DNA of 64,000 nucleotides from Ostrea edulis (taxonomy: Eukaryota): positions 10,850,001 to 10,914,000 of the forward strand of contig NC_079165.1 of the NCBI RefSeq assembly GCF_947568905.1. Reading direction: 5' to 3'. Both the position numbers and the translations under genes were made by a program. The notes under the pieces were generated by a model. It saw only the letters and a list, made by a program, of their open reading frames with translations. It ran no database searches and was not told the DNA's origin. Shown one piece after another: positions 40,016 to 63,738 of this stretch. Position 1 is the stretch's first letter. The number at the start of each line of letters is the position of its first letter.

Positions 40016-41931
40016 TCAATTTAACAAAAACCCAGAAAACATGGTTTTGTGACCGATTGTGTCTGCATTTGGATTACTCGTGGAGCTGACACGTACCCAT
40101 ATTGAACTTCCTGACGTCACTTCCGCAACAATCATCTCACCGCTGTTGCTATACGCGTCAGATTTGCTATCACAGTAAGTGTAGCCGATTGAGTTGCCAT
40201 CGTTCATGATTTCTATCCCCATACTTTGATGAGGTGCACATTCTACGCCAGAATAGAACACATAGAGGCCGGAGACATCAGCAGAGAAAATCCCAGTGTG
40301 CTGGTTATAGCGTGATCCAACATTGCTGAGGACCTTTTCGTAAATAAGGGTTTGTTTTGGAATAAGTGGGTCGTCTGAATACCTATAGGCTGTAAACCCA
40401 ACACGCTGTACAACGCTTCCACCCACTACAAGAAAACAAACAAACTCTCGCTGCCATATATGCTACCTCTCTACAATATATAATATCCATTTCAAGTTAG
40501 TTGTTTATTACATTTATCCATAATTGTGTGGACTTACTTAGTAGCCTTTTAACATGAGGAGTCAAAGGTCCTGCAGAAGCCTTCCCTTCAGTAGTCGAGC
40601 TCTGTTGGTCTGGTTCCCTACAAATTATAATATAGTACTATAATACAGTATTGATGCTGTGATACTAGTTATTCGTTGATAGCAGTTGATTTCTTCTTCT
40701 TTGATTCTAGATTAAAAAATAGTCTTCTCTTTATTAATCAGTGTTCTTGTATATAATAAAAAGGTGAGCACCTAACCCCAACAAAATAAACTTACTTTAC
40801 GTCCTTATTTGTTTGATATATAAAGATTACAATATTCGGGATCACATGTGCATGTCTCGTAATTTCATAGTACGAACGACAATTGAGTATTAAGGTAAGA
40901 ACAAAGCAATGAAAACAAGCACTGCGATGGTTAATTACTGAGCTGCAACGTCTTCCCATTGTAGAGAAGGGTGTTCTTGTAGAGAGGTCACCTGCTTTAG
41001 ATGAAGTGCAACGAAGTTTGATCAATGGATGGTTCATACGGTTGTAGCAATGAATACCAACGTTAACCGTAACACGGCCGGAAAACTCCATTTAAAGGTC
41101 ATATCTGAAAGACCCATGTGACTAATGACATAGCCCTCGGTGAAGGTCACGACTTATGTTAAACATCTAATGTTCGAGAATCAAACCGGGGCCTTCCGAC
41201 TGCAAAGCGAGCGCTCTAACCATTAAACTTATTCATCTGGTTACACAAGGAACCCCAACCTTGATCATCAGCGTCATACATTGGATCAAATTCGCGCCAC
41301 TTCATGCACAGCTGCTGACGTCACAATTTCACGATTCTCTACGAAAATCTAACAAAACTGTTAGCATATGTACCTATAAGCACTTCAAATAAGAGCAAAA
41401 GTTAGTGCTCTGTTGGTTCTACTAAAACATTGCCCACTGTAAATCAAGTTCATCAGATCCACTTTAGCGTGACACAATTATATGTTAAGAAAATAGTATG
41501 TGCCTTCATGGCCCTCATGTTTTATAATTGAAGGAAATACATTCCCATATGGCACATAAATGATAAGAATCCATCTCTAATCTTAATGGTGATCGTCAAC
41601 TACGAAAATAATAGGCGACAAATCACCTGTGGTACAGTTTGGTCGGCGGGGCGGTTGTCAGGGTCACGTTGTCTGATTTGTTCGAACCTGAAGTTCGATC
41701 ATCTGTGTCCTTGTGGTGACTCTGGGCTACAGTAGATCTGAGTGTCTCTAATTCACACCCCTGTGTCTTTACAATCTGCTGTAACTGAATAATCTTTTCA
41801 TTTTGTTCTTGGACCGTAGACGTCAATTCGGAGAGTTTCCTCAGAACATTTTGCAGCATAGGGTCCCCGTCAGCACAGACTCCGATTATTCCCAGAATAA
41901 GAAATAGAAATATTGAACTGTATAACGTCAT
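40016..41931 (-). CDS. Secreted coiled-coil C1q-domain-containing protein (C1qDC), 264 aa, 3 exons
   Basis: Exons 41931-41627 (signal peptide and coiled coil), 40617-40538 and 40425-40016 (VGFTAY..YNQHTGIF..GLYVF..IWVR..FSGFLL*). GT-AG junctions; phases 2 and 1 are consistent; total 795 nt. Confidence 0.92.

Positions 41932-45298: not shown

Positions 45299-45347
<49 letters not shown>
45299..45347. repeat. (CT)n microsatellite
   Basis: Direct reading. Confidence 0.95.
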
Positions 45348-45350
<3 letters not shown>

Positions 45351-45440: not shown

Positions 45441-46289
45441 TTATCCAAGTTTCAGCAGACCTGCAAACAAAAGCGCTCCTCCTACCACTGTCACTGTAAT
45501 GTAGAAATAAATAAAGAGATAAAAATAAGTCTGATCCAGAGAGATGTATTCAAATCTTTGAAGTTAGAATTTCATAGGATTAACATTTGACTGAAAAGTA
45601 TGTGTTTTTATAAAAGAATTACCTATGTCTTTGGAAATTCCATGAAATCCTAATCGGTCTAATAACCCTGGCTCCCTATATCCAAACATAGAGTTAACAC
45701 CGGACCCAAAAATAGAGTTAAAACCGGACCCAAAAGCCCCAGAGATGGGGGCCCGCATCGGATGGTATCCCCATAATCCGTTTCCATATCCACCCAGTGG
45801 ACTGTTATATCCATACATTTGATACACGTTATAGTGGCCGCCATATTGATATAAAGGATTGATCGGATAACCATACAGGTTTTGGTAGGGCTGAAGTAAA
45901 GCGTGAGGATGGAGGTAGGAGATACTTTGAAGCCCGTATCTCTGTGGAAGTGCAAAGCCCATCATTTTATACAGCCCATTTCCAAGGAGTGAATACATGT
46001 CTTGACCCATAAACCCGTATCCCAGGTTCTGTGGCAATACGATTCCAACACGCGGATAAGAAGAGACTCCATATCCGGATCCCCGAATTCCGTTTGCATA
46101 CGTTCCAGAATATGTCGTTCCATAGGAATTTCCTGTGGGAAGGTATGACTGTCCCGATAAACCACTTCCGTAAGATTTTTGGCCAGAATACTGTTTCGTC
46201 CCTTGACTCCATTGGTAATCGTTTGCTTGACTTAGTGTTAAGAATGAAGAAGAAATGCAGACGGTAATAAGAACTGAAGTGAAACCCAT
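45441..46289 (-). CDS. Secreted Gly/Tyr/Ser-rich low-complexity protein with hydrophobic C-terminal tail, about 239 aa (shell/periostracum matrix-like)
   Basis: Exon 46289-45623 (signal peptide MGFTSVLITVCISSSFLTLSQA, YG-rich body) spliced in phase 1 to exon 45493-45441 (VTVVGGALLFAGLLKLG*). The unspliced ORF would end at 45564. Confidence 0.8.
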
Positions 46290-46387
46290 TCTAATCTCAG
46301 AGACAAGTTAAATATATGTCTATTTACTACAGCCAATGCTATCGGTTTTTGACGAATATCTGAGTTAGTACAAGATTCAGACTAGCG

Positions 46388-46395
46388 TTTATATA
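46388..46395 (-). promoter_or_regulatory. Candidate TATA box for the Gly/Tyr-rich gene
   Basis: TATATAAA on the minus strand about 100 nt upstream of the ATG. Confidence 0.45.
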
Positions 46396-49300
46396 CATCG
46401 GAATGTTTATATGTGTAACGAGGATGACTGTATCTTTTTGCGGAAGAAAACTGGAGTATTGACGAAATTAGTCATTTTTACGCCTGAATCGACCAATGCA
46501 CAATGACGGTCGAGACTATAAACGGTCATCAATGACGCCACTAGGTATCACGTCCTCTCCCATTAGCCATGACCACCGTTGAACATCGTATAACACGAAG
46601 TTACTCGAAGTTATGTTCCCCGATGATCGCCCAGGACGTATTACCGCGTGATGTTTCGCAATAGAAGGAAGTAGTTCCCTCTACACGGCAGTGTATTGAC
46701 ATAAATTGTCGTCAAAATTTCAGGTAGAATCGAATGACTAATATCTTGATAGATATCTATTTGTACCGAATTACATTGTGGGTATACAAAGATCACATAA
46801 GTATACTAAACTACAAAATTGCAAAACATTATGCATCTTACATGTATATTAATGCGCCTTTTCTATAGTATACATTGTATATATTTACAGTGCATCCACC
46901 TGTCAATAGAATGTTAATATTAATTTCTTTGACTGACTTTTAAAGTTTTGAGGGAAACAACATTTTAATCAATCGTCTGGAAAAAGTATTGAATTAAATC
47001 CACGAAGGAAAATGTCTCGGTAAAGTTTATGCTAAGAAAAAGAGGACATTAGAAAGAATTCTCATACTTTTCAATTTTTTTGTCATTATATTCATCGGAT
47101 TCCGCATCAGCTTGGGGTTTAGGATGGATTCTAGACTAAAGCGATGCTCCCGCTATACGACAGCAGGGATGTCGATATGTCTGAAAGACACCTCTCGTAT
47201 ATTTATTTTATAGAAACACCAAAACATAAAAAGATATTACGAAGTTGGTGCAGAAGACAGAGACAGATCCAGAAAAAGTTTCAAAGGGTTGGTATTACGA
47301 CCCAAGTTTGTACTCTTTCCTCTCGCTAAAAAAAAAGGGGGGGGGGGAGGCAATTTATTTGTTAAAAATGTTCAACCAAAGGGAATTGCAACTCCCATAC
47401 CCCTCTCTTGATTCGCCACTGGATGTAGATCATTTATTATGGGCCAGCACGAGCCGGCCCATTCTATGATGTAAGCTGGAAAAGTCGCATGCGTTTCTGC
47501 AGGACAGGTGTCTGTTACCTAGGACGTGTTCTAATAAAGAATAATGTGTTCTATATTTCTATTTATTTATCTTTTTTATCATATTTTTAAAAAGGCCAAC
47601 TTTGCCTGTAATAATAGCGGAAATAGAAAATTGTCGAAAACGTGTGGAGATAATTCCTACCCCCACCCCCTAATGCTACGTAACTCAATCAATGCATGTC
47701 GAGTTGTTTAATGTATTTAAGTTGATTTAAAGAAAACATTATTTTCAAAATATTGAATCGCACGAGAAAAGAACACACACCAAAAAAACCCACCCCCCCC
47801 CTCCCAAAAAAAAACCCCAACCCAAAACCCAGATTCCAACAGAAAGATTACATCAGATACGGATTCAATATACATGTACATGTAATCAACATTGTCCAGG
47901 CGCGGATCTAGAATATTTCCAAGGGGCAGAACCAGAGGATTAAGTTGTTGATATCATGATATATATTTTATGTATTTTTTTATCGTCTGCATGGGGTTTT
48001 ATAGGTTAGCTACAATGTACATGTACCAAATAAAGACACTTTATAAAAAAGAATTTTAAATGACAAACGAATTTACAACGTTTATTGCTAAGAGGTGTGA
48101 TCAAAAGTTCAATGTCTGACAAAAATACTAAATTCACATATTTCTCATTAACATCCCACCCCTTTTAAACTACATTAAATGACTGTTGAAAATGATAATA
48201 ATCAGTGTGTGAAAATCGAATCGGATGACATAAACTTACAGGAGTTTTTATACCCCCCCTTCCCCAACTATTCAAATTTAGATTTTTATCCTACAATCAA
48301 TGCGATGCAGTAATAATATTCCTGGAAAATATAGATTCCATACCCTGATATTTCTCTCGTTCTCTCTGTTTTAAAACAAATCAAGGGGGGGGGGGTGCAA
48401 CCTTTGTACCCCCCCCCCCCGTCCCCCACTAGTAATGTTAATGCGTTGGTTCTACATGTAGTTTTTGCATATCGAATTGTGTTTTGGTCGTCAAAAATAT
48501 CAAACTTGACAGTGAAGAATTGAGTTATGCTTAAGATACATGTATCCTGATCCTGATCTGAGTGAGTAGATGACTAATATTTACAAAATTTGTTTCCTCA
48601 TGCCCGCGAAAAAAATCACACAATGGACACATAAATAAAATCTGTGACTAAAATTATTTTGCAGTCATATTAGCTTTCATTAACAACTGGCACTTAAGGA
48701 AGTTAGCTCCTGAGCTTTTGAGCAAAACTGCGCAGAATGCTACAGCTAAGTATTTAGTGGTTCTACTGATCCCATTGGTGCACACATATTACACATCTAT
48801 TACTAAACTCTATCCAGTTGAAAATTTTTGTGTCAATTAATCCCATTTAGATGTCTTTTTATTCAAATATAAGAATTTTTACCACGTAATATTACAGAAA
48901 CTGCCAAGATCACAGAAATTTTCACGTACAACGTCAAGAAAAAGAAATCATGCATATTATTTAGTCGAGGCGAAGTATATCAATTGATCGGACAAACGTA
49001 TTTTTGTATCGATCGATCGGACAAGCAATTGTGTATAGCCTGCTGTTGACTTGGGTATTGCGAATGAAGTTAAAATCTTATATAAGACTAGTTGCATTAT
49101 TCAGCTACCAATAAATTGTTACTTCTTATATAATTAGCTATTCTTTTTACTTAGTCCGTTCATCTCCGGATTTGATCAAAATTTCTCTTTTACCAGCGCG
49201 TTGTAATTTTCTCGTGCTTTTAAACAAATTAAAGGGATTCTTTTGAACACCTTTTCTGAAAATGTTTAGTTCTTACACTTCCCAATTTTTTTCCGGCCCA

Positions 49301-50657
49301 TGAATTTGGTGCTTACACCAATGTTTATTGTAATTGACCCATATCGGCTAATGAAGTCTTCCGAACAAATGGAGTTCTACATCATATGTATGCAAGGGCT
49401 TCTTTGCACCCATTTGCGTTTCCGTCAAATACCAGTGGAATTTTGATTTATAATGTTTAGAATGCTTAACTAAGGTATTACTAATGATCAGCAAAAATTT
49501 GAATGGCAGTAGTCAAGGTACATGGGAGATACAGAGGTCACAAGTCCTTGTTATGTAAACAAGGCTGTGCCATGTTTTTGTTTACATAGGTGAAATAACT
49601 AGTAAAAGTTTCGTTTAAAGCAGAGTTTTTCAATTTATAAGTGAATTCGTAACACAGTTAAATATTTTCTAGTGTTTGGCACATCTCATTTTGTTTTAAA
49701 CACGCTATTTTCTATCAAACAGTCTAATGCAAACAAAAACATGGCACAAGCCTTTTTACATAACAAAGAATTGCGAGTGCTGTATCTCACTTATAACTCA
49801 ACAACTGATGTTCAAATTTCGGTTGACCATTAGAAATACTTTAGTTAAGCATTGTAAACAAATAAAAATGGAAAAATAAGATTTGAAAATGTTCGGCCCA
49901 AATCGTGTCCATGTCCCTTTAAACCACACCTAGGGTACCATGGGCCCCTGTATTGGATGTATTCATAATACGCGGACAGTAATTATGATATCTTATTTCA
50001 TATATGATTGTTATTGCAGTAAAAACCGGGACCTAATCAATCAAGAAATTATTTGAGAAAAGAAAATATATATTTACATGTTTTGAAAAGTGTAATACTT
50101 GTAGATTAAAAGTAAAAACAGTTTTAATTTTTTTTAAAAGTATATTAGCTTATAAATGCAAAGACCGAATCACTATAAATCTGTTAGGCGTATGAACACT
50201 GTCGATCATGTAGTCTGCACCTCGGCCAACAGGAACCGGTCATTTTGTGATAATAATAGAAGGGGTATATACCATACCACTTATTAATAAAATTATTATT
50301 ACCCTTTATTAGGGGGTGGTATGGTACCTACTACTATTATTATTGCAGACAAAATTACCGGTTTTTGTTTTCGGCTGCACGTACAAAGCTTTGTTGTCCA
50401 TTCCCGTCTCAGACAACACAAGTGCACCTCATTCGATGCCTAGAGAAGTTCATCTTACCTCTAATGTGGTTAATATCACCAAACAAACATAAGAAATTAA
50501 TCCAAGTGCTGGGTTTTTCAACAGTACAGTAATTGTACTTTCAATTTCTCAAAGTGACTGCATGTTTAAACCCAGTTCAGATTGTACAACTTTGTTAATA
50601 AGTTGATGTTTATGATATTTAATTGAAAATCAATTCAAGAATTGATTGGACTATTAT

Positions 50658-51056
50658 ATGCGCATCTGGTGCATCAAAATTGGTACCGTATAAGTTTTAC
50701 ATTACGACCCCTGGGTAGAGACCTCTGCTGGTGGACTGTTAGTTCCCGAGAGTCTCTACAGCCAAGTAGCTAAGTACATCGTTACTAACTTGAAAATACG
50801 GATGTATATTTAATTGCTGGGATAAAAGTTAGAAATTCATTTCAAAATAAAGGATTATCTCCCTCATGCATAGCTCTTATCCTTGGACGAATTTGGCTCC
50901 AGTTTTTGGCACTCTAGATCTAGTTTTCCTATTAGCTCTTACACATTTATTGTTATTTCGAATTTCCAAAATTTCGGCTTGAGCATCACTGAAGAGACAT
51001 TATTTGTCGAAATGCGCATCTGGTGCATCAAAATTGGTATCGTATAAGGTTTTACA
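50658..51056 (+). mobile_element. Retrozyme-like element: 354-bp unit with about 45-bp terminal direct repeat and hammerhead-like core
   Basis: ATGCGCATCTGGTGCATCAAAATTGGTA.. at 50658 and 51012; CTGAAGA, GACA/TGTC stem II, GAAA, TGCGC/GTGCA stem III, TC. Confidence 0.7.
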
Positions 51057-52305
51057 TTTTTTAAGCATTGCGCACTCTTTTCTTTTACGTTATGACATCA
51101 CACTTTTGCTGTCCATGGCTGTTCCGTTAATCGCTACTTACCCAAAGAATTGGGCGGGAAATTGAAGATATAAATGAAAAATGCACACGTTAAAAAGGTT
51201 TCAAAAAAGTAAATATAAGCAATGAATTATTATTTTTGAAAGATGTACATGTAGTCTCATAACTGCACAACGATGTGTGCAAAAGATTTAATTGAGATGA
51301 TGAGACATATTTCATCAGACAAAGGAGAGTAGTTTTGGAATCCTTTGAGAAAATTGAATTTCATGAGAACAGATGCTATGAGACATACATGTGAGAATTT
51401 ATCAGATGATTTAGAATTGTTTGAGAACATTCTTGAGATTGTCGAGGAAATTGAAATGATATGATCAGACATATTTCTATCATTTTATCAGATGAATGAG
51501 AATTCTTTTCGAATCATTTGAAAAGATTCATGACATTATTGAGATATCCACTTAGAATATTGCTTTATAACTTTTTCCTTTGGGGTGATACAATTATTTC
51601 ATTTATTGGTTTTTGACGTTCCTTTAAGCAGATATTTGCTCAAAATGGTATTGTGTGACAACTTTGGAGAAAGACCAAGCATTACTCTTCCTAAATTTTA
51701 TTTAATAAAATGGCGTGTTTTTCATATATCAAAACGAGTTTGTAATTTATCTAAATAAAATGTTTTAAACATATTACGTATATCACTGCAAAATTCGGCC
51801 ATTTCATTAACTTAACAGTCCCAGTATAAGTCATTACAATAAAAATCAAATTAGATCGAACAACGACATGAATTGTTCATTTGCAAGATATAAAATACAA
51901 TTCTTCCATTTAAAAAAAACAACTCATCTCATTTCATAAGGCAACCCCATCGTGATTACTAGTATAACATGCATCTATAATTGCTTAGAAAGGTGTTCCT
52001 ATGTTTTACTCTTTCCATTACTTGGCAATTGCAGCAATTTATTGAAAATTATGTTTTAAAAAAAGCTAGTAGTGCTATTATAACTTGTATATCTATACAT
52101 CATCATTCCAAACCACGCCTAGCGCTTCTAAGTACTTTCAGGACTTTGATTTTTATTAGTAATGACAGTCCATGTGGTGATGATATCGTCAGTTGTAGGT
52201 CTGTTTAAATTGTTTTTCTTTGGTTTTATCACGAACTGGGGGAAGAAACCTCTTTTACATGGGTGTGATAATGTAATTTATATACATTTGTATACTCACT
52301 CTGGC

Positions 52306-52600
52306 CAACCGCCGCGGTGGTCTAGAGGTAGAGCGTTCGCCCCGCATGCTGAAGGTTGGGGTTCGAATCCCGGCCGCGACAGACCAAAGTTTTTAAAACA
52401 GGTAGTGACAGTTCCATCGCAAACGCTCGGCGTGAATGTCACGGGTCCTCGGAGATGACCTTAAAAACGGATGACCCGTGACACAGTAGGTGTGGCACGC
52501 TAAAGAATCCGCACTGCTCAATGGCCGTAAGCGCCGAGCACAGGTCTAAATTTGAAGGCCTTCATCGGCCTTGATGACGTCTCCATATGAGTGAAAGATC
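52306..52600 (+). mobile_element. Full-length tRNA-derived SINE
   Basis: A box TGGTCTAGAGG and B box GTTCGAATCC, no CCA or acceptor-stem end, then the conserved body seen in many copies in this window. Confidence 0.85.
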
Positions 52601-53835
52601 CTACTACCAATTTTGTATTCTTTATAGGAGTTATGAAATTGATATCTGTTCGTTATCTTCACTTTTCATTCTAGTAATAGAAAACCGATAGATAGCTAAA
52701 AATATAAGAGGAGCGTGCTGTCTTTGGGGAATTCTGAGGCGCTTTTTCCGGGGGGTATGGACCCTGGTTGGTTCTTTTTAGGGGGATATTCTATGCTGGA
52801 TTCATTTTTCCGGGAAGAGAGTTTAATCCCGTCCCGTTTTTACGGGGAAGGGGGGGGGGGTTTATACGACAAAACCGGCTCCCAAAATCGTGTTTGTAAG
52901 CACGGTCTTTGTCTATATCTAGAGTCAGATGGCTGGAAACAAACGCTTGCCATCAGCCAAGAAACCACGTGAGGAGATGAGAATACATGTACTTGTAGCG
53001 AGATTCCTAAAAAGATGTCAAAAACATCAACATTTTGACATAGCTTAATGATGAATCAGATTAGGGTGCTTGCACAAATGAAAGTTTCTAAAGAGTTTTT
53101 TTTAACTTTGGCACCATGTTGATAGTTGGGTAACGCAATCTGTTTAGCAAAAACAGGGCTCGTGCTATTTTTTTGTCGTTGTAGAAGTAGATGTTTGTGT
53201 CAATTTTTAAAATTGGGGTTTGTTGTTTTAAATATGGTTTACACTACTGAGTACTCTCATGTTAATAGATTAAATATCTAAATATTCTTTTGGACAACAT
53301 TTTGGTTAAGTCATCTTTTGTAAGTAATTCTGTGCACAATATTGGATACAAAATTTAAAAAACTAAATATGTCCTATACTGTATTCATTAATGCGATGGC
53401 AAATTGTTTCTGTCTTCCAGTTAACAGAATTTAGGAAATTATCGTCGGCTGATACCGAGATATCACGTGACATCCGTGAAAGACTGTCATCACGTGTATT
53501 CTCGTGTAAAAAATAAGAACAGGGCTGGATAGAGAGAGATGCTTTTAATAGCAAGTGCAACACAATACAATAAAAAACAGAAACTTCGGGCGACCAATTC
53601 AAGTTTGCGTGATGAACAATCTGTGAAGTAAAATGGTAATTAGTATCTCATTTTGGCTGAATATACGCTGTGTAGTCTGTGCCGGTTCTTCATCTCTATT
53701 TAAAATTTATTTATATATTCATGAGAAATACACACTTTTCATCTACGGTAAGTAGGGTAGGCACTGTTCTATCATTATAAGAATACACCTTTGAAATGGC
53801 GACTTACAGCGATAAAAGACAGAAACCCTTCTGGT

Positions 53836-54492
53836 TTATCCAGTGGTGGTGGTGCTGGTGTTGTTCCGTTGGTAAAGCCAGTATAATAGAAGACCTCCCA
53901 CTGAAAAACAACACCAATAAGTTTTAAATCAATCCGACAATTTCAGACAGCTGACATTCAATACCGCCAAACGGTCGCATGTATACTTACACAACGCGGC
54001 AATCCACCCGTTCTGGTTTTGCTGCGTTTGCTGACGAATTCCAGTTCCCAAGTTTAGGGGGACGGGGTTCGGTAAGGATGGCAGGGGAGTCGGAACGCCT
54101 GCCCCTCCACCACCACCACCTACAGGGACAGGGTAAGGAACAGGGTTGGAGTAGTAATAAGGTATGTATAAGGCACCCCCTCCTCTGCGTCCTTTACCGT
54201 ATCCACTTCCGCCATTTCCTCCACCACCACCGCCATATCCACTATAACCTCCGTATCCCCCGCCGGAATATCCACCCATGGCGGAATACACGCCTCCACT
54301 CATGTATCCCCCTCCTCCTCCTCCCCCTCCTCCAAAGCCGCCGTAACCCCCACCGCCGTAACCCCCGCCGCCGTAACCCCCGCCGCCGCCGTAACCCCCG
54401 CCGCCATAACCTCCGCCATATCCACCACCGTAGCTGTCAGCAGTCACACAGGAAAATACTGTCAAGGCAGCGATCGCTATTAGGATCCGCAT
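53836..54492 (-). CDS. Secreted Gly-rich (GGY) protein with C-terminal TM-like helix, 188 aa
   Basis: Exon 54492-53991 (MRILIAIAALTVFSCVTA, GGGY repeats, GYGKGRR, YPVPV, QN-rich linker) spliced in phase 1 to exon 53900-53836 (LGGLLLYWLYQRNNTSTTTTG*). An acceptor AG lies directly before the ATG. Confidence 0.88.
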
Positions 54493-56625
54493 CTATGTAT
54501 AAGAAAGGAGGAGATAAATCATCTTTGACGTACCATTTGTAGATGTCGCTGACCATGGAATACCTCTGCAGTGTTTTAACACATTCGGAGCACGTTTATG
54601 TACCTATAGATTTAATTATTTTCCCCCAGAAAAATGCATCCTTGATAGAATTAACAGAATTAGAATTTGCGAAAAAATATCTCGGTTACCAAAATGTACA
54701 ACTTTATCATATCTTATGTCAAATGTAGTAGCGCATATAATATTATATATATAAAGATTCTTTGATTGAAAGAAAAAGAAAGTATTCGAAACTGAAAATC
54801 CTAAGAAAAGAAATGATAATTATATCTAAACATCATCAAGATATCGCATTTGAAAAATTGTGAAAAGTTAAACATGGACGTAGAATCCTCCTACAATTAC
54901 TAAATACATCTGTAGAAAATGAAAATAGCAGTAGATAAACAGTGACGAACAATATATAATTACAATTCAAGAGCAGCGTCACTTGAAAATAAATGATTGG
55001 ATGAATATACCAGAGCTACACTGATTTTATCGTTAGGTCGTAAAATCCCAATATGAAATGCTGTAGAGTACCTTGTTGGGATGATCCACGGGCGCCACCA
55101 AATGGATAGCACACTTACCCGGTCAAAATCTTAAATACCAGGACCTGACTTAACGTTACACAAGACAACTCCCTTTCCGTAGAAGTCAAACTCATGGGTG
55201 ACTATGATAGATATACCGAACATATATCCGTTTTCGGATCGTGATTTGGGTTGACTTTTGTAAACGCAAGAAGATGGATCGGCTCGGTGACACAACTGAG
55301 CAAGTAGACCATCGCGCATTGATACAAGCCGTATTTTCGCAGTTATATGAATGGGTATAGATGCTGTACACATAAGTTTGTTTTATCTTATCGCGCCTTT
55401 ATGTAAAGCAATGTCCTCACATCACTACTCTGTCGTAGGAAACAGGCGTCTTATTTCCCATTACATCTACACTATTCTTCCGTATCTAAATACTTTATTT
55501 CATTTTTATTTTCTGTGAAGCCTTAAATACAGTGTTGAATGTTTGTTGTAAAAACAACTGTTATTCTTCTAGATTGCAATGCTATAGAAATACTTAGAGT
55601 ATACATGTAGCAGGTGGGGGGGGGGGGGGGGGGGGGGTGAGGGCTGGCCCACTACTTTTGGCAATGTTCATTTTCCGTTACTTTTACATGAAAAGTGAGT
55701 TATTTTCAAATGCAAAGTCAGATATGTCGGTTGATTCCCATCTTCACGGTTTATTGTAGTGAATATGATAGGTGAAACGTAAAAACAAAGTAAGAATCAA
55801 ATTCATGCAGGGAAGGACCACCAATGCTCGCCTCAACCCCCCCCCCCCCCCCACCTACCCACACACGCACGCAAGCACACACAATCACACACGATTAAGG
55901 ATGTTGGAGTTTGGGGAAAAGTACCCATTTGTAGGGGTTTTTTTCATCAAGAATTTTAAACATATGTGAAGTAAACTCCGACTGCCCCCTCCTCTTTGAA
56001 AAACGATGCTACGTGCTTAGTAATGTTTCCCCATCTTTAGTGTTTACCGTTTTTTCTAATTCATCATTTACGACTAGATACTGGTATGAGATTGTATTCT
56101 TCAAACAAAATGATATGACGCTGTGAAATTTACATCAGAAATAAAAGTAACAAATGTGAATGTAGTCTTTCGTGTTTCTCTTTTCTCGTTACACGTGGAG
56201 GACTGTAATATATAATAACAGATCGGTAAACCGTCCACCGTTTTCGGTCTATCTCTTCACTTTGCGAGGATGAAACGGGAATCGCGGAGATTACGTCGGC
56301 AATCCATCAGCGCTGTGACGTAACTGCTCATTCACTGTAACGCATAGCAGGAAAAACTACGGCAAACCAATCAAAGCCCATCGCTATCTATTAAAACATG
56401 CTTAAGGTACACAGGGGGGTGGATTAAAAACCGCAAAAGGAACGACAAATGGAATAAAAGATAATGTCTTACATTGCATATTTCTTTTAAATGATCAAAT
56501 ATGCCCATTAAATATATTTCATAGGAATTTCGATTAAACTATCAACGGTGGGGAAAACAAACTTCACTCCTTTTTGTACCGATATCCTGTCGGGATCCCC
56601 ATCGGACACAGTGGTGGTTGGTCAG

Positions 56626-56633
56626 TATAAAAT
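56626..56633 (+). promoter_or_regulatory. Candidate TATA box upstream of a putative 5'UTR exon of the plus-strand Gly-rich gene
   Basis: TATAAAAT, followed by a GTGAGT donor near 56704 and a TTTTCAG acceptor ending at 57187. Confidence 0.4.
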
Positions 56634-57195
56634 AAATTGCCACTTTTAAGGTTCGGGGTCCACTCTGGATACGGTAGCCGAGAACACACTAGTCCCCGAA
56701 GTAGTGAGTGAAATTTTGTTGTGAATTTCTCTGACTTTATCAGATTGGTTTACTATCGTTTCAACAACAGCAAGCCCCTTCGCTTGATCGAGCGTGCAAA
56801 TATTTGGGCGAGGATTCTCATATATTTCAATGAAACGGGTTTTACTTTTGTTCTCAGTGACCAATCACATTGCAAAAAATGATAAAACGTGGTCCAAACT
56901 CATTTTTATTGAATCAGTGTGAAATTTGTTCGCTCGATCGAAATGTCATGCTGTTATAAGAACGATAGTAACTGTATTTCTCTCTTATTCTAAATTGACA
57001 TATATCTTTTTAAACAACACACTTTCGAACTATATTAGAACTTTATTTAATTTAACGGCAAAATGAATTTCAGTAAGCATCATATTTTGAAATCAAAATT
57101 TATTCATTATAAATTTTTCGCAATTTGAATAATCATATATGCAATAGAATGTACATTTGGCTATCGAGAAAAAGTCCTTCTTTTCAGGAGACAAA

Positions 57196-58081
57196 ATGAA
57201 GGCCATCTTGACGACTCTGTTGGTTTCGGTGTGTGTTGGGGCTAGTTTGGCCGGTGGATACGGCGGCGGCGGCGGCGGTGGATATTACGGATATGGAGGT
57301 GGATACGGCGGTTATGGTGGATACGGAGGAGGATATGGCGGAGGGTACAGCGGATACGGCGGTGGCGGCGGCGGTGGTGGTGGAAAGGGCTACGGAAAAG
57401 GTATTGTCATTTCTCTTCAAATAGGGTCTATACTTCTACGTAACTAATGCCAGTATTGCTTAGGAATGATCGCTTGCTCCGATTAAAAACAAACATTCAT
57501 ATTTGGTACAATTTTCTGATATTTTATCAGGCAAAGGGGGAGGATATTCTACCATTATCTATTACCCGGTGGCCCAGGATTATTATGTTCCTGTGCCCAT
57601 GGGCGGAGGCGGATTTGGATATGGAGGCGGCTACGGAGGCGGACTCGGCGGATTTGGAGGCGGCTACGGAGGCGGAATTGGAGGCGGCTACGGAGGCGGA
57701 CTCGGCGGATTTGGAGGTGGACTCGGAGGTCTAGGTGGAGGACTGCCTAACGGTGGACTAGGACTGGCCTTGGGATCCGTTAATAACCAAAATAATATGG
57801 GATTATTTGGTGGTATGGGTGGCCAAAGCGCTTTAGGAGGAGGTAAGTAGAATCTAATAGCAATTAATGCAGATATTGGCACTGGAGAAGTGGCAGTGTG
57901 GGCGGGGTCTCCTAATGATGTATTTGTAAATCATTGTGTTCAGAACTCCTTAATCTGATTCTTGCCGTTTTAATCTACAGCTCTTGGTCTGGCTCTCACT
58001 GCGTCTAACCCTCTACTCGGAGGACTAGTCACAGCTGGTTCAGGATTCCCCGGCCTCGGACTTTTGGGAGCCATCGGCTGA
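57196..58081 (+). CDS. Secreted Gly-rich (GGY/GGL/GGF) protein with hydrophobic Gly/Leu tail, 205 aa, 3 coding exons
   Basis: Exons 57196-57400 (MKAILTTLLVSVCVGASLA, GGY), 57531-57842 (GKGGGYSTIIYYPVAQDYYVPVPMGG.., NNQNN) and 57981-58081 (ALGLALTASNPLLGGLVTAGSGFPGLGLLGAIG*). All introns are phase 1 GT-AG; 618 nt in total. Confidence 0.9.
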
Positions 58082-60061
58082 TTGTCCATACAATGCTGGT
58101 ATTGGTAACCAGACATTTTTTTCAGGGGCAAGTTAATGTACAAAATTTAACAAATTTTCCCTTTGATTTTGACTGAAAATAAACTGTTTCACGTCCGGTT
58201 TATGTTTAGAAGATATGACAATCATACAATGAACTGATATTTTTTTCTAATTCTATATCAATTAAATTACAGATTATCTGCATCTCGCATCGCATTCAAG
58301 AGTTTTGTCACCGCCCACATTTGTTCATAATTGTATATACAATATTATTGATGCAATAAATGGCTGTATCCTTTTTGATTGTTAAAGTCTGATTCTTTAA
58401 GCCAATGTTATCTTAATAAGGGAAAATAATTTGACGTCTTCAAGTATAATGACTGTATTGACCATAATCTTTATTTCGCTTCTTTTTAAGTCTTTCCACC
58501 AAAACAAGATTTGATGTTACAAGGCGCGGTTCTAGCGTTTTTTGGTATTAGGGGTAACTGAGGTACAAACTGTAAAATGACACAATATGACGTTTTATTG
58601 GTAATGTTCAACCACAGGAAGTACAACCCCCTTAAACCCTCCACCTTTTAAATCCACCACTGTCCTATTAAGTTTATTTTAACTTCGGACCTTGATAAGT
58701 GTTTTCTAACGAAGCAATTGTGAATAATTTACATGATATAGGGGATATTTTTTTTAATTCTCATTTTGCAGGTGTATCATATCTAGAAAGCTTTTGCGAG
58801 ATTTGTCGAGACATCAATATGACCGAAATATTCCAAATTAAAGCAGTTTGCAAAGTCAAAGCTTTATGGTGAAACATTTTTTGGTATTCATCCAATCAAT
58901 GAAAATGTTGAATTTTTAGGACATTAATAAATCATCTGGCGTTGACTTTAATTGTTCCATGTCGTCTAGATAGATATGTGCACCGGTAACTCACCTTATT
59001 ATCGCAATTCACCTTTGAATTAGAACGCTTTACCCGATATAGTATTGCGTTGAGTGACGACACAATTGAATGAGGCGATTGAACAGTTTGAATGACATGT
59101 TTGATGTAATACAACAAGAGTTTTCTTTGGCCGATCACAGCCCGCCCACTTTCTCGTGCGGATTCAGGTGATCAAATAAGTTGAACGAACTAGAAAATTA
59201 CTTGCTGGAGAACTGTAGCTCTCTGAAAAAATATTGTGACAGCGAGCAACAGATCCACCTTTTATAAAAACCTTCGATTTATGGGGCACTATATCGGTGT
59301 ATTCTTGTGTTGCTGTCTCATAAATTCACTATAAAAACATTCTTAACAACTTGTGCCCAAACATACCTTCAAATATTCATTAAATCCACACACGACCCGA
59401 AAACTCGCAGCTTGCCACAGCAGGAGTTCCTCAGGGTTCTATTTTGAGTACGTTTGTATTTTTATTTCATATAAATGACTTTCCGTTGCTTGTAAATAAT
59501 TCATTACCATATTTACTCAATATGCAAAACCTTAAACTACAAATTATTTACACTAAGCAAGATAAAATCGTTTCTCCCCCTGAAAGCTTTATTACAATGC
59601 ATACATTCTGCCGTCTGTTAACTACTGCCTGACTGTTTGGGGTACGTGTAATACATCCAAAGTTGGTTTGGAAAGAATATTTTAAAAATTACAAAAAAGA
59701 GACGCAACGACAAATCTGGATGAAACCCAGATTCATCATCTAAAATTTTGCTTGAGAAACTTGGTTGGTTCATAATCTATGAGCTAGTCGATTTACACAA
59801 ATATGCTTTATTATTTGAATTTCCCGCGCTTTGGCTCCTCATTATCTTGGCGAGTTATTTGAATTTCAACCCTCTGCGTTCTGAATCAGATCATGATCCT
59901 CGATTACCAAAGTTACGCACACAATTATTCAAAACCTCTCTGCAATACTCAGGTGTGTGACTATGAAACAAAGTACACCATTACATAAGGCTTTCTCAGT
60001 CTCAACATACCAGGCACTTATAAAAATAATGTAGAAAAATGCATTATCAGCTGCCGTACCA

Positions 60062-60625
60062 CTATCTAAGCATGCTTGTGTTTTCTCGTTGATAATTTCT
60101 ATACATTTATGTCTATTAATCGCATTATCTAAGCATGCTTGTGTTTTCTCGTTGATAATTTCTATACATTTATGTCTATTAATCGCATTATCTAAGCATG
60201 CTTGTGTTTTCTCGTTGATAATTTCTATACATTTATGTCTATTAATCGCATTATCTAAGCATGCTTGTGTTTTCTCGTTGATAATTTCTATACATTTATG
60301 TCTATTAATCGCATTATCTAAGCATGCTTGTGTTTTCTCGTTGATAATTTCTATACATTTATGTCTATTAATCGCACTATCTAAGCATGCTTGTGTTTTC
60401 TCGTTGATAATTTCTATACATTTATGTCTATTAATCGCATTATCTAAGCATGCTTGTGTTTTCTCGTTGATAATTTCTATACATTTATGTCTATTAATCG
60501 CATTATCTAAGCATGCTTGTGTTTTCTCGTTGATAATTTCTATACATTTATGTCTATTAATCACATTATCTAAGCATGCTTGTGTTTTCTCGTTGATAAT
60601 TTCTATACATTTATGTCTTTAATCG
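60062..60625. repeat. 63-bp minisatellite, about 9 near-identical copies
   Basis: Period 63 (60066/60129); unit ..TATCTAAGCATGCTTGTGTTTTCTCGTTGATAATTTCTATACATTTATGTCTATTAATCGCA.. Confidence 0.95.
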
Positions 60626-61351
60626 CATTTTGGAATATTGGATTTTGTGATTCTTTATCATTGATATATAATTTTGATATATAAATTTGATATAAGTGAT
60701 ATAAACAAAAGTTTACTACGTGCTCTTGTGTTCAGGCTATCGAGACTCTGTTTTAAGTGATTATTCTTGTTTATAATTATATATATCAAGTGGAAGGCCC
60801 TGGGGAAGAATAGTGCGTGTACTATTCAGGTCACCTTCTTGAAATAAAGTATTATTATTATTATATTTTATTACTTATATTTTTCAATATTTATTACATC
60901 TCAGATAACATTGTATACATATGGAATGAGCAAATAAATTGAAAGGGAAGTTGAGCATACCAAATTAAAGTCATTTTCAAGAAACTAAATGCAATACAAT
61001 CGCTTGAGGCAATTGATTTAATTGTGAATTTCAAATAGAGAGAAAGTACAAGAAATTACCCAAACAGTGACGTATAACACAGTTACTTAATTTGTAAATT
61101 AAACTCCATAGCGGCGTATGAATGTTAGGAGTGTTACCTTTGGCTCAAGTGAGCTATAACGAACACATACGCGAATATTTTACGTGTGCTGTTCTCCTTA
61201 GTTTTCAATATTGCGTCATTGGAAAGTTTGTGATAAATCTGCGTTTTAAATCGTACGTATTTTAAATACATTGTATACGAAAGTATTGGAGACAATATGA
61301 TTTCCAGTACATACCAACTGATGAGTGGAACGCCTTAGTTTCCTTCATTAT

Positions 61352-62815
61352 TTGATGTTGTAATATCATCATGTGATGTTGTAATGTTACCATGCGATGT
61401 TGTAATATCATCATGCGATGTTGTAATGTTACCATGCGATGTTGTAATATCATCATGCGATGTTGTAATATCATCATGCGATGTGGTAATGTCATCATGT
61501 GATGTTGTAATGTCATCATGCGATGTTGTAATGTCATCATGTGATGTGGTAATGTCATCATGTGATGTTGTAATATCATCATGTGATGTGGTAATGTCAT
61601 CATGTGATGTGGTAATATCATCATGTGATGTTGTAATGTCATCATGTGATGTTGTAATGTCATCTGTGATGTGGTAATGTCATCATGTGATGTGGTAATG
61701 TCATCATGTGATGTAATGTCATCATGCGATGTGGTAATGTCATCATGCGATGTAGTCCGAAATATCTGACGTTTTCCTGACTTTTTTATGATTTTGATAT
61801 TTACCGTGCCAGGAAAACGTCAGAACCGGCGCCATTACGTAAACTGGCAATTCGCCGCCTCCAACTGGAGGCGGCATTCTCGGGCCGATTTTAAATACTT
61901 TGGAGTCGAATTCAATGTTAAACTCATAATTAATCAATAAAACGATGCTTCTTGTACTTACTAATATCGGTTTTATGGGTTCTTTCAACACATAAAAGTG
62001 TCTTGAAAACATTTTAAGAAACTGTTGAGCTTTGTTTTGCGTCACGTGACTCGTTCGCTCAAATGACAGCGAAACTTCGGTTGACTACAATTGTGTGCTT
62101 CTGTTATCAAATTTTGGAGTGGTATTTTCTTTTCATCGATATCAGTAAGTACAAGAAGTATCGTTTTGTTGATTAATTATGAGTTTAACATTGAATTCGA
62201 CTCCAAAGTATTCCAGTTTACGTAATGGCACCGGTTCTGACGTTTTCCTGGCACGGTATATATCAAAATCATAAAAAAGCCAGGAAAACGTCAGATATTT
62301 CGGACTACATGCGATATTGTAATGTCCTCATGTGATGTTGTAATGTCCTCATGTGATGTTGTAATGTCATCATGTGATGTGGTAATGTCATCCTGTGATG
62401 TGGTAATGTTATCATGTGATGTTGTAATGTCATCATGTGATGTGGTAATGTCATCCTGTGATGTGGTAATGTTATCATGTGATGTTGTAATGTCATCATG
62501 TGATGTGGTAATATCATCATGCGATGTTGTAATGTCATCATGTGATGTGGTAATGTCATCATGTGATGTGGTAGTGTTATCATTTGATGCTGTAATATCA
62601 TCATGCGATGTTGTAATGTCAGCAAGCGATGTTGTAATGTCATCATATGATGTAATGTCATCATGTGATGTTATCATGTGATGTGTTATTGTCATCACGT
62701 GATGTTGTAATGTCAGCAAGTGATGTTGTAATGTCATCATGTGATGTGTTATTGTCATCATATGATGTTGTGATGTCATCATGCGATTTGGAAATATCAC
62801 GTGATGTAGTAATGT
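61352..62815. repeat. 21-bp minisatellite (CATCATGTGATGTTGTAATGT) split in two by a TIR element
   Basis: Arrays at about 61352-61751 and 62309-62815, same orientation. Confidence 0.9.
61752..62308. mobile_element. Non-autonomous TIR element with long inverted arms
   Basis: GTAGTCCGAAATATCTGACG.. (61752-61969) is inverted at 62137-62308; ATGCGAT on both flanks (register ambiguous). Confidence 0.85.
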
Positions 62816-63738
62816 CATAATACATGTATAATATGGTATAATCATTACGTAATGTGGTTATATACTATGTTATACATTTATTATCTGTGATAATTCTTCG
62901 GAATACTGTGTAATCTATTTTTTTCCATCCACATCACGCATTGAGATATTACCACAACACGTAACGAGAATCAGTCGTGAATGGGAGTTCAAAACCATAA
63001 AAGTTCAAATCTATTTGACAAACAGAAGTAAATTGTACAATTTAATCTTTATTTTGTAATTCATGATTATAACAGCCTTGGCAGTGAAAAGGGCTAGTGA
63101 AAAAACCCAAACAAACAAAAAACAATGCAATTTACAAAATGGCAAGTGCAAATATGATACATACCTGGAAACGAAAAATTATGGGAAATAATAATTTCAG
63201 CCTCTTATCCTGCAATTGCTGATTGTATGATTAATTCTCGGAGATTGTATGAAACTTTGGGTTGAAATTTATTACGAAGAATAAAATGAGACCCTATTGT
63301 TGCAGTATGTATTCAGTTTAGATGACACATCGGAGCTGATTTCCTCTTCTGTCACATGTATAACTTGTAGTCCTTGTCCAGCCATACAATATGAGCGATA
63401 CATTCAATACTAGTGGGCGATATGTGAGTAATAAATTTTATAATGACGCCTGGCTATATTGAGTACTGTAGATGTCGTGTAGATTACAATAAACGTAACC
63501 CAATATAATGGTTAATCACAGTTTCGCTATAAATGATAAACCGAGTTTACCACCAGTGTTCCTATCAGCTAAACAAATTAAAGGACTGTCAATTTCTATG
63601 TCCAACATAACATTGGTATTCCTACATAGTGTATGTATATAGGGACATTAGAACACAGTTCTCTAAGAAAAACATTGTTTGAGATAAACATGAAGATGAT
63701 AAAACAAATACAGACAAAATGAGCTAGAGTGTAGTAAG

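What the first reader, a model, noticed from the sequence alone, without database searches (positions are those of the whole stretch)
45441..58081. Three secreted Gly/Tyr-rich genes each append a hydrophobic tail via a separate phase-1 terminal exon
Seen: none of the three tails is in the ORF track. Splicing adds IVTVVGGALLFAGLLKLG*, WIAALLGGLLLYWLYQRNNTSTTTTG* and ALGLALTASNPLLGGLVTAGSGFPGLGLLGAIG*. The architecture is signal peptide, disordered Gly/Tyr domain, then hydrophobic tail. Established: shematrin-type Gly/Tyr shell proteins end in basic tails, and Tyr-rich matrix proteins are substrates for tyrosinase/DOPA crosslinking. Inference: a clustered, possibly undescribed family of membrane-tethered, GPI-anchored or self-assembling matrix proteins (periostracum, ligament or cement).
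Basis: partly seen in the sequence, partly recalled or inferred. Interest (0 to 1): 0.7.

Follow-up and report, generated by a model that had tools for sequence, protein, structure and literature searches.

The report
Oyster Gly/Tyr genes with hydrophobic tails
Three neighbouring flat-oyster genes for secreted glycine/tyrosine-rich proteins each end in a short, separately spliced hydrophobic exon. Only one tail is confirmed (it is conserved across oysters and already in RefSeq as 'shematrin-like protein 1'), the three genes are not shown to be one family, and their tissue and role are untested.

Summary
The window is Ostrea edulis.

- **Gene 1 (46289-45441, minus).** The spliced product is letter for letter RefSeq XP_056012055.1, 'shematrin-like protein 1'. 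Orthologues in Saccostrea (two species), Crassostrea virginica and C. gigas carry the same tail. The tail exon is the best-conserved segment: 85% mean pairwise identity, against 32% for the signal peptide and 66% for the rest.
- **Genes 2 and 3.** These rest on sequence signals only. No annotated protein was found and no RNA run was available.
  - Gene 3 has one homologue in another species, and its similarity stops exactly at the predicted donor.
  - Gene 2 has no relative at all, and one low-depth contig may carry a nonsense variant.

The 'one clustered family' reading fails. After composition correction the three genes show no similarity to each other. Each gene and each tail exon is single-copy in the genome. 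The tails also differ in kind: strongly hydrophobic to the end in gene 1, a short hydrophobic stretch followed by a polar Thr-rich end in gene 2, and only weakly hydrophobic Gly/Leu-rich in gene 3.

None has the basic shematrin C-terminus. A membrane tether (TM helix or GPI signal) is the best guess for gene 1. The scan noted other Gly/Tyr gene clusters elsewhere in this genome (s1-292127, s1-287459).

The parts
45623..46289 (-). Gene 1 exon 1: ATG at 46289, signal peptide (about 22 aa), Tyr/Gly/Ser/Leu-rich low-complexity body of 222 codons plus 1 base
   Evidence: identical to residues 1-222 of RefSeq P0006
45494..45622 (-). Gene 1 intron, 129 nt, GT..AG, phase 1, 75% A+T
   Evidence: In read-through ORFs from other species, similarity stops at this donor
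45441..45493 (-). Gene 1 terminal exon coding part: a 17-residue hydrophobic tail, then TAA at 45443-45441
   Evidence: Present in RefSeq P0006 and in orthologues P0003, P0014, P0015, P0029. 84.7% mean pairwise identity. Predicted helix 221-238 in a low-confidence model
53991..54492 (-). Gene 2 exon 1: signal peptide, GnY repeats, Tyr/Pro/Val block, Gln/Asn-rich stretch, and the start of the hydrophobic segment
53901..53990 (-). Gene 2 intron, 90 nt, GTAAGT..CAG, phase 1 (predicted only)
53836..53900 (-). Gene 2 terminal exon coding part: the rest of a 15-16 residue hydrophobic stretch, then an 11-residue polar Asn/Thr-rich end and the stop
   Evidence: No homologue or annotation found
57196..57400 (+). 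Gene 3 exon 1: signal peptide and GnY repeats
57401..57530 (+). Gene 3 intron 1, 130 nt, phase 1 (predicted)
57531..57842 (+). Gene 3 exon 2 (a symmetric 1-1 exon): Tyr/Pro/Val block, Gly-Leu/Phe repeats, and a conserved Asn/Gln-containing end block
   Evidence: Allele P0045 and other-species homologue P0046. P0046's only match in this genome is this exon
57843..57980 (+). Gene 3 intron 2, 138 nt, GTAAGT..CAG, phase 1 (predicted). An in-frame stop lies two codons into the intron
   Evidence: Similarity to P0046 ends at this donor
57981..58081 (+). Gene 3 terminal exon coding part: 33 residues, Gly/Leu/Ala-rich and only weakly hydrophobic, then TGA
   Evidence: 59% G+C against 39% in the intron

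Best explanation
These are three separate single-copy Ostrea edulis genes for secreted, basic, almost acid-free, cysteine-free Gly/Tyr-rich low-complexity proteins. They are the general kind of protein that bivalves use as extracellular structural material. Each ends in a short last exon after a phase-1 intron.

**Gene 1.** This is the RefSeq gene 'shematrin-like protein 1'. It belongs to an orthologue group found here only in true oysters (Ostrea, Saccostrea, Crassostrea).
- Shown: its 17-residue C-terminal hydrophobic helix and the 22 residues before it are the most conserved part of the protein.
- Inferred: the tail holds the disordered Tyr-rich chain at the surface of the secreting cell.
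  - It could be a retained C-terminal membrane helix with a three-residue cytosolic stub.
  - Or it could be a GPI-attachment signal, with invariant Gly217 as the attachment site and the Ser/Ala at position 219 as the small omega+2 residue.
  - The very high sequence conservation, set against a freely drifting N-terminal signal peptide, leans towards a retained, sequence-specific helix.

**Gene 2.** It probably uses its tail in the same way, as a short membrane span followed by a polar Thr-rich end. This rests on sequence signals alone.

**Gene 3.** Its last exon mostly continues the Gly/Leu-rich composition of the preceding exon. It is not convincingly an anchor.
For: - **Gene models.**
- **Gene 1 splice and tail.** P0006 equals the spliced model. 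Orthologues P0003, P0014, P0015 and P0029 keep the tail. P0029 also occurs on Logan contigs of at most 989 nt.
- **Intron position.** Read-through ORFs from DNA contigs of several species diverge right after the donor.
- **Conservation by segment.** Tail 84.7%, pre-intron block 80.9%, mature body 66.1%, signal peptide 31.8%.
- **Hydropathy.** 2.45 over 15 residues at the extreme C-terminus of gene 1. 1.77 for gene 2, followed by a polar end. About 1.3 for gene 3.
- **Structure model.** Mean pLDDT 32.5. Helices of ten or more residues are only the signal peptide and residues 221-238.
- **Composition.** pI 8.7-9.3, 1-5 acidic residues, no Cys, Gly 19-50%, Tyr 11-12%.
- **Precedent.** EGF-ZP shell matrix proteins carry a C-terminal TM domain (PMC9290575).
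Against: - No RNA evidence for O. edulis. Only DNA-like runs were found.
- No expression or proteome data for any of the three genes or their orthologues.
- No GPI or TM predictor was available. The anchor reading rests on hydropathy and simple rules.
- Gene 1's hydrophobic run (15 residues, 19 with its flanks) is short for a plasma-membrane helix. The spacer after the candidate omega site is short for a GPI signal.
- Gene 2 has no homologue or annotation. One low-depth contig (depth 2.6) of run X4 reads a stop at codon 75.
- Gene 3's tail is weakly hydrophobic and contains prolines.
Confidence: 0.55

Rival explanations
1. The tails are not membrane anchors. They are hydrophobic end-pieces of fully secreted matrix proteins that drive self-association or coacervation, as hydrophobic Gly/Leu/Val-rich segments do in elastomeric proteins. 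The mature proteins would end up in an extracellular material.
For: - Gene 3's tail has the same Gly/Leu character as its preceding exon and is only weakly hydrophobic.
- The gene 1 tail is conserved far beyond what a sorting signal needs, which fits a functional part of the mature protein.
- All three bodies are low-complexity and Tyr-rich.
Against: - Gene 1's 15-residue run at Kyte-Doolittle 2.45, at the very end of a protein that has a signal peptide, would normally be captured by the membrane or the GPI machinery. This is established cell biology, not tested here.
- Gene 2's hydrophobic run is followed by Arg and a polar end, which is typical of a stop-transfer segment.
Confidence: 0.2
2. 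For gene 2, gene 3 or both, the predicted tail exon is not used, or the gene is a young, weakly constrained or non-functional Gly-rich ORF. The real products would then end by read-through. Gene 3 would stop two codons into the intron, and gene 2 after 20 codons.
For: - No annotated or assembled protein containing these exons is in a 15-billion-protein collection that does hold this species' RefSeq set.
- Gene 2 has no relative in a full HMMER scan apart from two unrelated repeat proteins.
- Run X4 has a possible Tyr75-to-stop variant.
- Both genes show in-frame repeat-length variation and a Ser-to-Gly change, as neutral repeats would.
Against: - Consensus GTAAGT donors lie exactly where the open frames end. 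The acceptors are good and the introns are 90-138 nt.
- The terminal introns hold no poly(A) signal, but one lies about 95-125 nt after each tail stop.
- The gene 3 tail exon has coding-like G+C content.
- Gene 3's homologue P0046 loses similarity at the same donor and is a reciprocal best match.
- The nonsense call is one contig at depth 2.6, 35 nt from its end, beside a repeat.
Confidence: 0.25
3. One reading: the three genes are paralogues of one clustered, undescribed family that shares a common anchor exon.
For: - The three genes share an outline: signal peptide, Gly/Tyr body, phase-1 terminal exon.
- They lie within 12.6 kb.
- Genes 2 and 3 share a short Tyr-Tyr...Pro-Val-Pro motif after their GnY repeats.
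- All three tails contain a Gly-Gly pair inside the hydrophobic run.
Against: - Composition-corrected BLASTP finds no alignment at E<=10 for any pair.
- The motif alignment between genes 2 and 3 has E=1.0.
- Uncorrected scores are driven by Gly/Tyr content.
- No further copies of the bodies or tails exist in the genome.
- Gene 1 with its tail is already in RefSeq.
Confidence: 0.1

Closest known systems
Shematrins (Pinctada Gly/Tyr-rich shell framework proteins)
   Same: - Signal peptide, basic and acid-poor.
- Gly/Tyr-rich, with GnY repeats followed by hydrophobic residues: 10-11 such motifs in genes 2 and 3.
- NCBI names gene 1 'shematrin-like protein 1'.
   Different: - The defining basic C-terminal signature (RKKKY, RRKKY and the like; PMC3896809) is absent from all three. 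They end in hydrophobic or polar uncharged residues.
- Gene 1 has only one GnY motif.
- No Pinctada protein reached E<=1e-3.
KRMP lysine-rich matrix proteins (Pinctada)
   Same: Small secreted proteins with a Gly/Tyr-rich domain thought to cross-link (PMC3896809).
   Different: KRMPs have a Lys/Trp-rich lead domain and a basic C-terminal motif. Neither is present here.
EGF-ZP shell matrix proteins with a C-terminal transmembrane domain
   Same: Signal peptide plus a C-terminal membrane segment on a protein found in shell matrices. This is a precedent for matrix proteins that start out membrane-tethered (PMC9290575).
   Different: Those proteins have folded EGF and ZP domains and a furin site before the TM domain. 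The genes here have no Pfam domain, and no dibasic cleavage motif is seen before the tails.
GPI-anchored biomineralisation proteins such as sea-urchin MSP130 (own knowledge, not tested here)
   Same: Signal peptide, Gly-rich stretches, and a C-terminal hydrophobic signal at the extreme end, as in gene 1.
   Different: No sequence relationship was tested or expected. MSP130 is a large folded glycoprotein. GPI attachment of gene 1 is only a heuristic reading.

Membership tests
Shematrin family | N-terminal signal peptide on a secreted protein | tested here: met
   All three start with a hydrophobic leader and a small-x-small cleavage motif. Read by eye; no predictor was available.
Shematrin family | Gly/Tyr-rich GnY (XGnX) repeat domains | tested here: met
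   Genes 2 and 3 have 10 and 11 G(2+)Y motifs, with Gly 42-50% and Tyr 11-12%. Gene 1 has only 1 motif and Gly 19%, so it does not meet this feature.
Shematrin family | Basic C-terminal signature (RKKKY / RRKKY / RRRKY / IRRKK / PRKKY) | tested here: not met
   The signature is as given in PMC3896809. The three C-termini end in uncharged residues, and none has the motif.
Shematrin family | Detectable sequence similarity to Pinctada shematrins | tested here: inconclusive
   The search with gene 1 found only Ostreidae proteins at E<=1e-3. The search needs shared 5-residue words and a set length range. No direct alignment to a Pinctada sequence was possible.
Shematrin family | Mantle expression and presence in the shell matrix | not testable with these tools
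   No RNA runs were found. The accession numbers are absent from the papers searched.
GPI-anchored proteins | Signal peptide plus a hydrophobic segment at the extreme C-terminus with no cytosolic domain | tested here: met
   Gene 1 meets this: a 15-residue run at Kyte-Doolittle 2.45, followed by only three residues. Gene 2 does not, since 11 polar residues follow the run. Gene 3 is weak, at about 1.3.
GPI-anchored proteins | Small omega and omega+2 residues, then a polar spacer of about 5-10 residues before the hydrophobic run | tested here: inconclusive
   In gene 1, Gly217 is invariant and position 219 is only Ser or Ala in five species. The polar spacer is only Lys-Asp. This is a rule of thumb from own knowledge; NetGPI and big-PI were not available.
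Single-pass type I membrane proteins | Hydrophobic helix long enough to span a bilayer (about 18-21 residues), with a positive residue on the cytosolic side | tested here: inconclusive
   Gene 1 has 15 strongly hydrophobic residues (19 with flanks), then Lys. Gene 2 has 15-16, then Gln-Arg. A helix is predicted at 221-238 of gene 1, but only at pLDDT below 50.

The most novel reading that the evidence does not exclude
True oysters possess a lineage-restricted class of cell-surface-tethered, intrinsically disordered Tyr-rich proteins, with gene 1 as the prototype. Their near-invariant C-terminal helix would be a working part of the mature protein. For example, it could pack in the apical membrane of secreting epithelium and present a cross-linkable Tyr-rich brush that seeds periostracum, shell framework or cement. 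The neighbouring orphan genes 2 and 3 would be independent, younger inventions of the same design.
Probability: 0.2. Interest if true: 0.6.

Novelty: new variant of a known kind. Interest (0 to 1): 0.35.

Why it matters
Bivalve Gly/Tyr-rich secreted proteins are usually treated as freely secreted matrix components. A conserved membrane-anchoring end on one of them would point to a cell-surface step in matrix assembly, which is testable with simple fractionation and localisation experiments.

The practical lessons are modest. Gene 1 is already annotated, but its name hides the fact that it lacks the shematrin hallmark. Genes 2 and 3 appear to be missing from the protein sets searched and may be unannotated low-complexity genes.

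Tried and rejected
**Searches that gave nothing**
- Pfam on all main exons: no family at E<=1.
- RNA evidence: the run search gave four DNA-like holders and no RNA run. Laying their contigs on 53700-58200 gave even coverage across the introns and no joints at them.
The C. gigas contigs carrying the spliced product could therefore not be read.
- Gene 2: the word-indexed search on residues 96-167 gave no hit. A full HMMER scan of 1.84 billion representatives gave two unrelated repeat proteins.
- Metagenome scans with the gene 3 alignment and with the gene 2 C-terminal part: nothing.
- Exact look-ups of the read-through ORFs: absent from the collection.
- ESM Atlas for P0006: best score 0.76, uninformative.
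- Own-genome searches with main exons, tail exons and P0046: self matches only.
- Literature searches by accession number, and for GPI-anchored or periostracal Gly/Tyr proteins: nothing specific.

**A chance test that was too crude**
- It asked how often an open frame plus GT..AG gives a hydrophobic tail. About 1-5% of open frames in the window did so under loose rules. The rules missed genes 2 and 3 themselves, so I give it little weight.

- The joined spliced proteins of genes 2 and 3 have no reference and were sent to no search or folding tool. All searches were exon by exon.
- Joined models were built only inside local scripts, for composition and hydropathy.
Full report
**Source and setting**

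The window is G000:C2:10850001-10914000 of an 895-Mb assembly. I confirmed this: the spliced product of gene 1 is identical to RefSeq XP_056012055.1 of Ostrea edulis.

A six-frame scan finds only three Gly/Tyr-rich open frames in the 64 kb, and these are the three genes of the finding. Their neighbours are unrelated:
- a C1q-domain gene at 40016-41931 on the minus strand;
- minisatellites at 59.9-62.8 kb.

**Checking the observation**

I read both strands and translated the exons by reference. This gives the following models.

| Gene | Strand | Coding exons | Introns | Stop | Length |
|---|---|---|---|---|---|
| 1 | minus | 46289-45623; 45493-45441 | 45622-45494 (129 nt) | TAA 45443-45441 | 239 aa |
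| 2 | minus | 54492-53991; 53900-53836 | 53990-53901 (90 nt, GTAAGT donor) | 53838-53836 | 188 aa |
| 3 | plus | 57196-57400; 57531-57842; 57981-58081 | 57401-57530; 57843-57980 (GTAAGT donor) | 58079-58081 | 205 aa |

- Every intron is GT..AG and phase 1.
Gene 3 has one alternative acceptor, at 57943.
- No AATAAA or ATTAAA lies in a terminal intron. One lies about 95-140 nt after each tail stop.
- That the tails were 'not in the ORF track' only reflects that an ORF list cannot see splicing.

**Gene 1 is confirmed and already annotated**

A search with exon 1 found five clusters, all from true oysters. The cluster members include these RefSeq models:
- Ostrea edulis 'shematrin-like protein 1' (P0006, 239 aa, equal to my spliced model);
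- Saccostrea echinata (P0003);
- S. cucullata (P0014);
- Crassostrea virginica (P0015);
- C. gigas (P0029).

All of them end in the same hydrophobic tail. The exact C. gigas spliced product is also recorded on Logan contigs of at most 989 nt. For a continuous 241-codon frame, that implies a spliced transcript.

ORFs called on DNA contigs of the same species read into the intron. They lose all similarity to each other right after the donor, which is what an intron predicts.

Conservation by segment in the five-species alignment (A2; figures):

| Segment | Mean pairwise identity |
|---|---|
| Tail exon | 84.7% |
| 22 residues before the intron | 80.9% |
| Mature body | 66.1% |
| N-terminal signal peptide | 31.8% |

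So the tail is the best-kept part of the protein. It is much better kept than a segment that only needs to be hydrophobic.

An AlphaFold2 model from this shallow alignment is of very low confidence (mean pLDDT 32.5). Besides a few short turns, it shows two long helices, the signal peptide and residues 221-238. This is compatible with a disordered body between two hydrophobic ends.

**Genes 2 and 3 remain predictions**

*Gene 2*
- The word-indexed search on the non-repetitive half (residues 96-167) found nothing, not even a copy of itself.
- A full HMMER scan of 1.84 billion representatives found only two long repeat proteins. The one I read is unrelated.
- A metagenome scan found nothing.
- The read-through ORF is not in the collection. 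One possible reason is that gene callers prefer the equally long opposite-strand ORF that the GGN repeats create.

*Gene 3*
- The search found an O. edulis allele with a 19-residue in-frame repeat deletion (P0045).
- It also found one protein from another species (P0046, ENA). P0046 has a signal peptide, Gly repeats and a well-conserved end block.
- Similarity to P0046 stops exactly at my donor site.
- P0046's only match in the O. edulis genome is gene 3's exon 2, so the two are reciprocal best matches.
- No RefSeq-type model was found for this gene either.

*RNA evidence*
- The only sequencing runs offered were DNA-like. Their contigs cross the introns at even depth and show no joints at them, so splicing is neither shown nor refuted.

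*Variants in run X4*
- One contig, at depth 2.6 and 35 nt from its end beside a repeat, reads C for A at 54268. That would turn Tyr75 of gene 2 into a stop. This may be an assembly error, but it is a caution.
- There is also a Ser52Gly change in gene 3.
- No variants were seen in the tail exons.

**Are they one family?**

With composition-based statistics, BLASTP finds no alignment at E<=10 between any two of the three proteins, with or without the low-complexity filter. Without the correction, genes 2 and 3 align at 1.8e-35 and gene 1 aligns weakly to both. This simply measures shared Gly/Tyr content. The one non-repetitive motif that genes 2 and 3 seem to share, after their GnY repeats, scores E=1.0.

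Own-genome searches found only the query itself for each main exon and for each tail exon. There is therefore no sign of a shuffled 'anchor exon'. The tool warns that its first look is limited.

The scan had noted other Gly/Tyr clusters on other pieces of this genome (s1-292127, s1-287459). I found no sequence link to them.

**The tails differ in kind**

| Gene | Tail character | Kyte-Doolittle mean |
|---|---|---|
| 1 | 15 strongly hydrophobic residues, then only Lys-Leu-Gly at the very end | 2.45 |
| 2 | 15-16 hydrophobic residues that begin before the intron, then Gln-Arg and a polar Asn/Thr-rich end of 11 residues with two N-x-S/T sequons | 1.77 |
| 3 | 33 residues rich in Gly/Leu/Ala with two prolines, continuing the composition of exon 2's last part | about 1.3 |

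**Mechanism**

*Shown*
- Each protein has a secretory leader and is basic: pI 8.7-9.3, 1-5 acidic residues and no cysteine.
- Gene 1 has a conserved hydrophobic end.

*Inferred from general cell biology*
- A signal-peptide protein with such an end is either held in the membrane by it or has it exchanged for a GPI anchor.
- For GPI, gene 1 offers an invariant Gly217 with Ser/Ala at +2, but the polar spacer is very short.
- For a retained helix, the argument is the near-invariance of the tail, including its small-residue pattern, while the true sorting signal at the N-terminus drifts freely.
- I put membrane tethering of gene 1 at about 0.6, and I slightly favour a retained helix over GPI.
- For gene 2, a stop-transfer segment is the natural reading if the exon is used.
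- For gene 3, I would not call the tail an anchor.

A Tyr cross-linked extracellular material is a reasonable guess for all three bodies. Nothing here tests tissue or material.

**Comparison with known families**

PMC3896809 describes shematrins as having Gly-Tyr-rich GnY domains plus a basic C-terminal signature such as RKKKY.
- Genes 2 and 3 have the repeats but not the signature.
- Gene 1 has neither in any strength.
- No Pinctada protein reached significance.
- The RefSeq name for gene 1 is therefore a compositional label, not a tested membership.

Membrane-tethered matrix proteins are not unprecedented. EGF-ZP shell proteins carry a C-terminal TM domain with a furin site in front, and relatives that lost it are shell components (PMC9290575). 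No such cleavage motif precedes the tails here.

I found no paper on a Gly/Tyr low-complexity bivalve protein with a hydrophobic anchor, or on any of the accession numbers. The library covers only part of the literature.

**Limits and procedure**
- The joined spliced proteins of genes 2 and 3 have no reference, so they were not sent to any search or fold tool. Searches were exon by exon.
- Joined models were used only inside local scripts, for composition and hydropathy.

**Verdict**

The sequence observation is real and well read.
- It is confirmed for gene 1, which is already annotated.
- It is plausible but unverified for genes 2 and 3.
- The 'one undescribed clustered family with a common anchor exon' reading is not supported.

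What remains mildly interesting:
- an oyster-restricted, disordered Tyr-rich protein whose most conserved part is a C-terminal hydrophobic helix;
- two apparently unannotated low-complexity genes next to it.

Noticed in passing
window 40016-41931 (-): A two-exon gene. The first exon carries a signal peptide and a coiled-coil region (41623-41931). The second looks like a C1q globular domain (40016-40426). It appears to be a typical bivalve C1q-domain protein, read by eye only.
   Followed up: no
window 55814-55964 and 56720-56870: Two short stretches between genes 2 and 3 have contig depths 40-200 times the local level in all four DNA runs, with many loose ends. They are high-copy repeat fragments in the head-to-head spacer of the two genes.
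   Followed up: no
window 54268 (gene 2 codon 75): In run X4, one low-depth contig reads C for A. That would change Tyr75 (TAT) to a stop (TAG) in gene 2. It could be an assembly error next to the Gly repeat, or a null allele.
   Followed up: partly
window 57533-57841 (gene 3 exon 2) versus P0045: A Logan contig carries an allele of gene 3 that lacks 19 residues of the Gly-Leu/Phe repeat, in frame. Repeat number is therefore polymorphic.
   Followed up: partly
window 53979-54542 (+): A 187-aa ORF lies on the strand opposite gene 2, with the same length as gene 2's read-through ORF. It is a by-product of the GGN/NCC repeats. It may explain why gene callers did not record gene 2.
   Followed up: no
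P0015/P0016 (Crassostrea virginica orthologue of gene 1): The RefSeq model carries a 33-residue N-terminal extension ahead of the conserved signal peptide. It was earlier named 'heterogeneous nuclear ribonucleoprotein 1-like'. Both the start and the name look like annotation artefacts of a low-complexity protein.
   Followed up: no
window 59929-60622 and 61262-62845: Long minisatellite arrays give repetitive ORFs on both strands, with 21-residue and roughly 7-residue periods in translation.
   Followed up: no
window 45300-45350 (-): A (GA)n microsatellite of about 50 nt lies in or just after the 3' UTR of gene 1, just upstream of the first ATTAAA.
   Followed up: no
window 57943 (+): An alternative CAG acceptor inside gene 3's last intron would give a different 21-residue end, also partly hydrophobic. 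It is unknown whether it is used.
   Followed up: no
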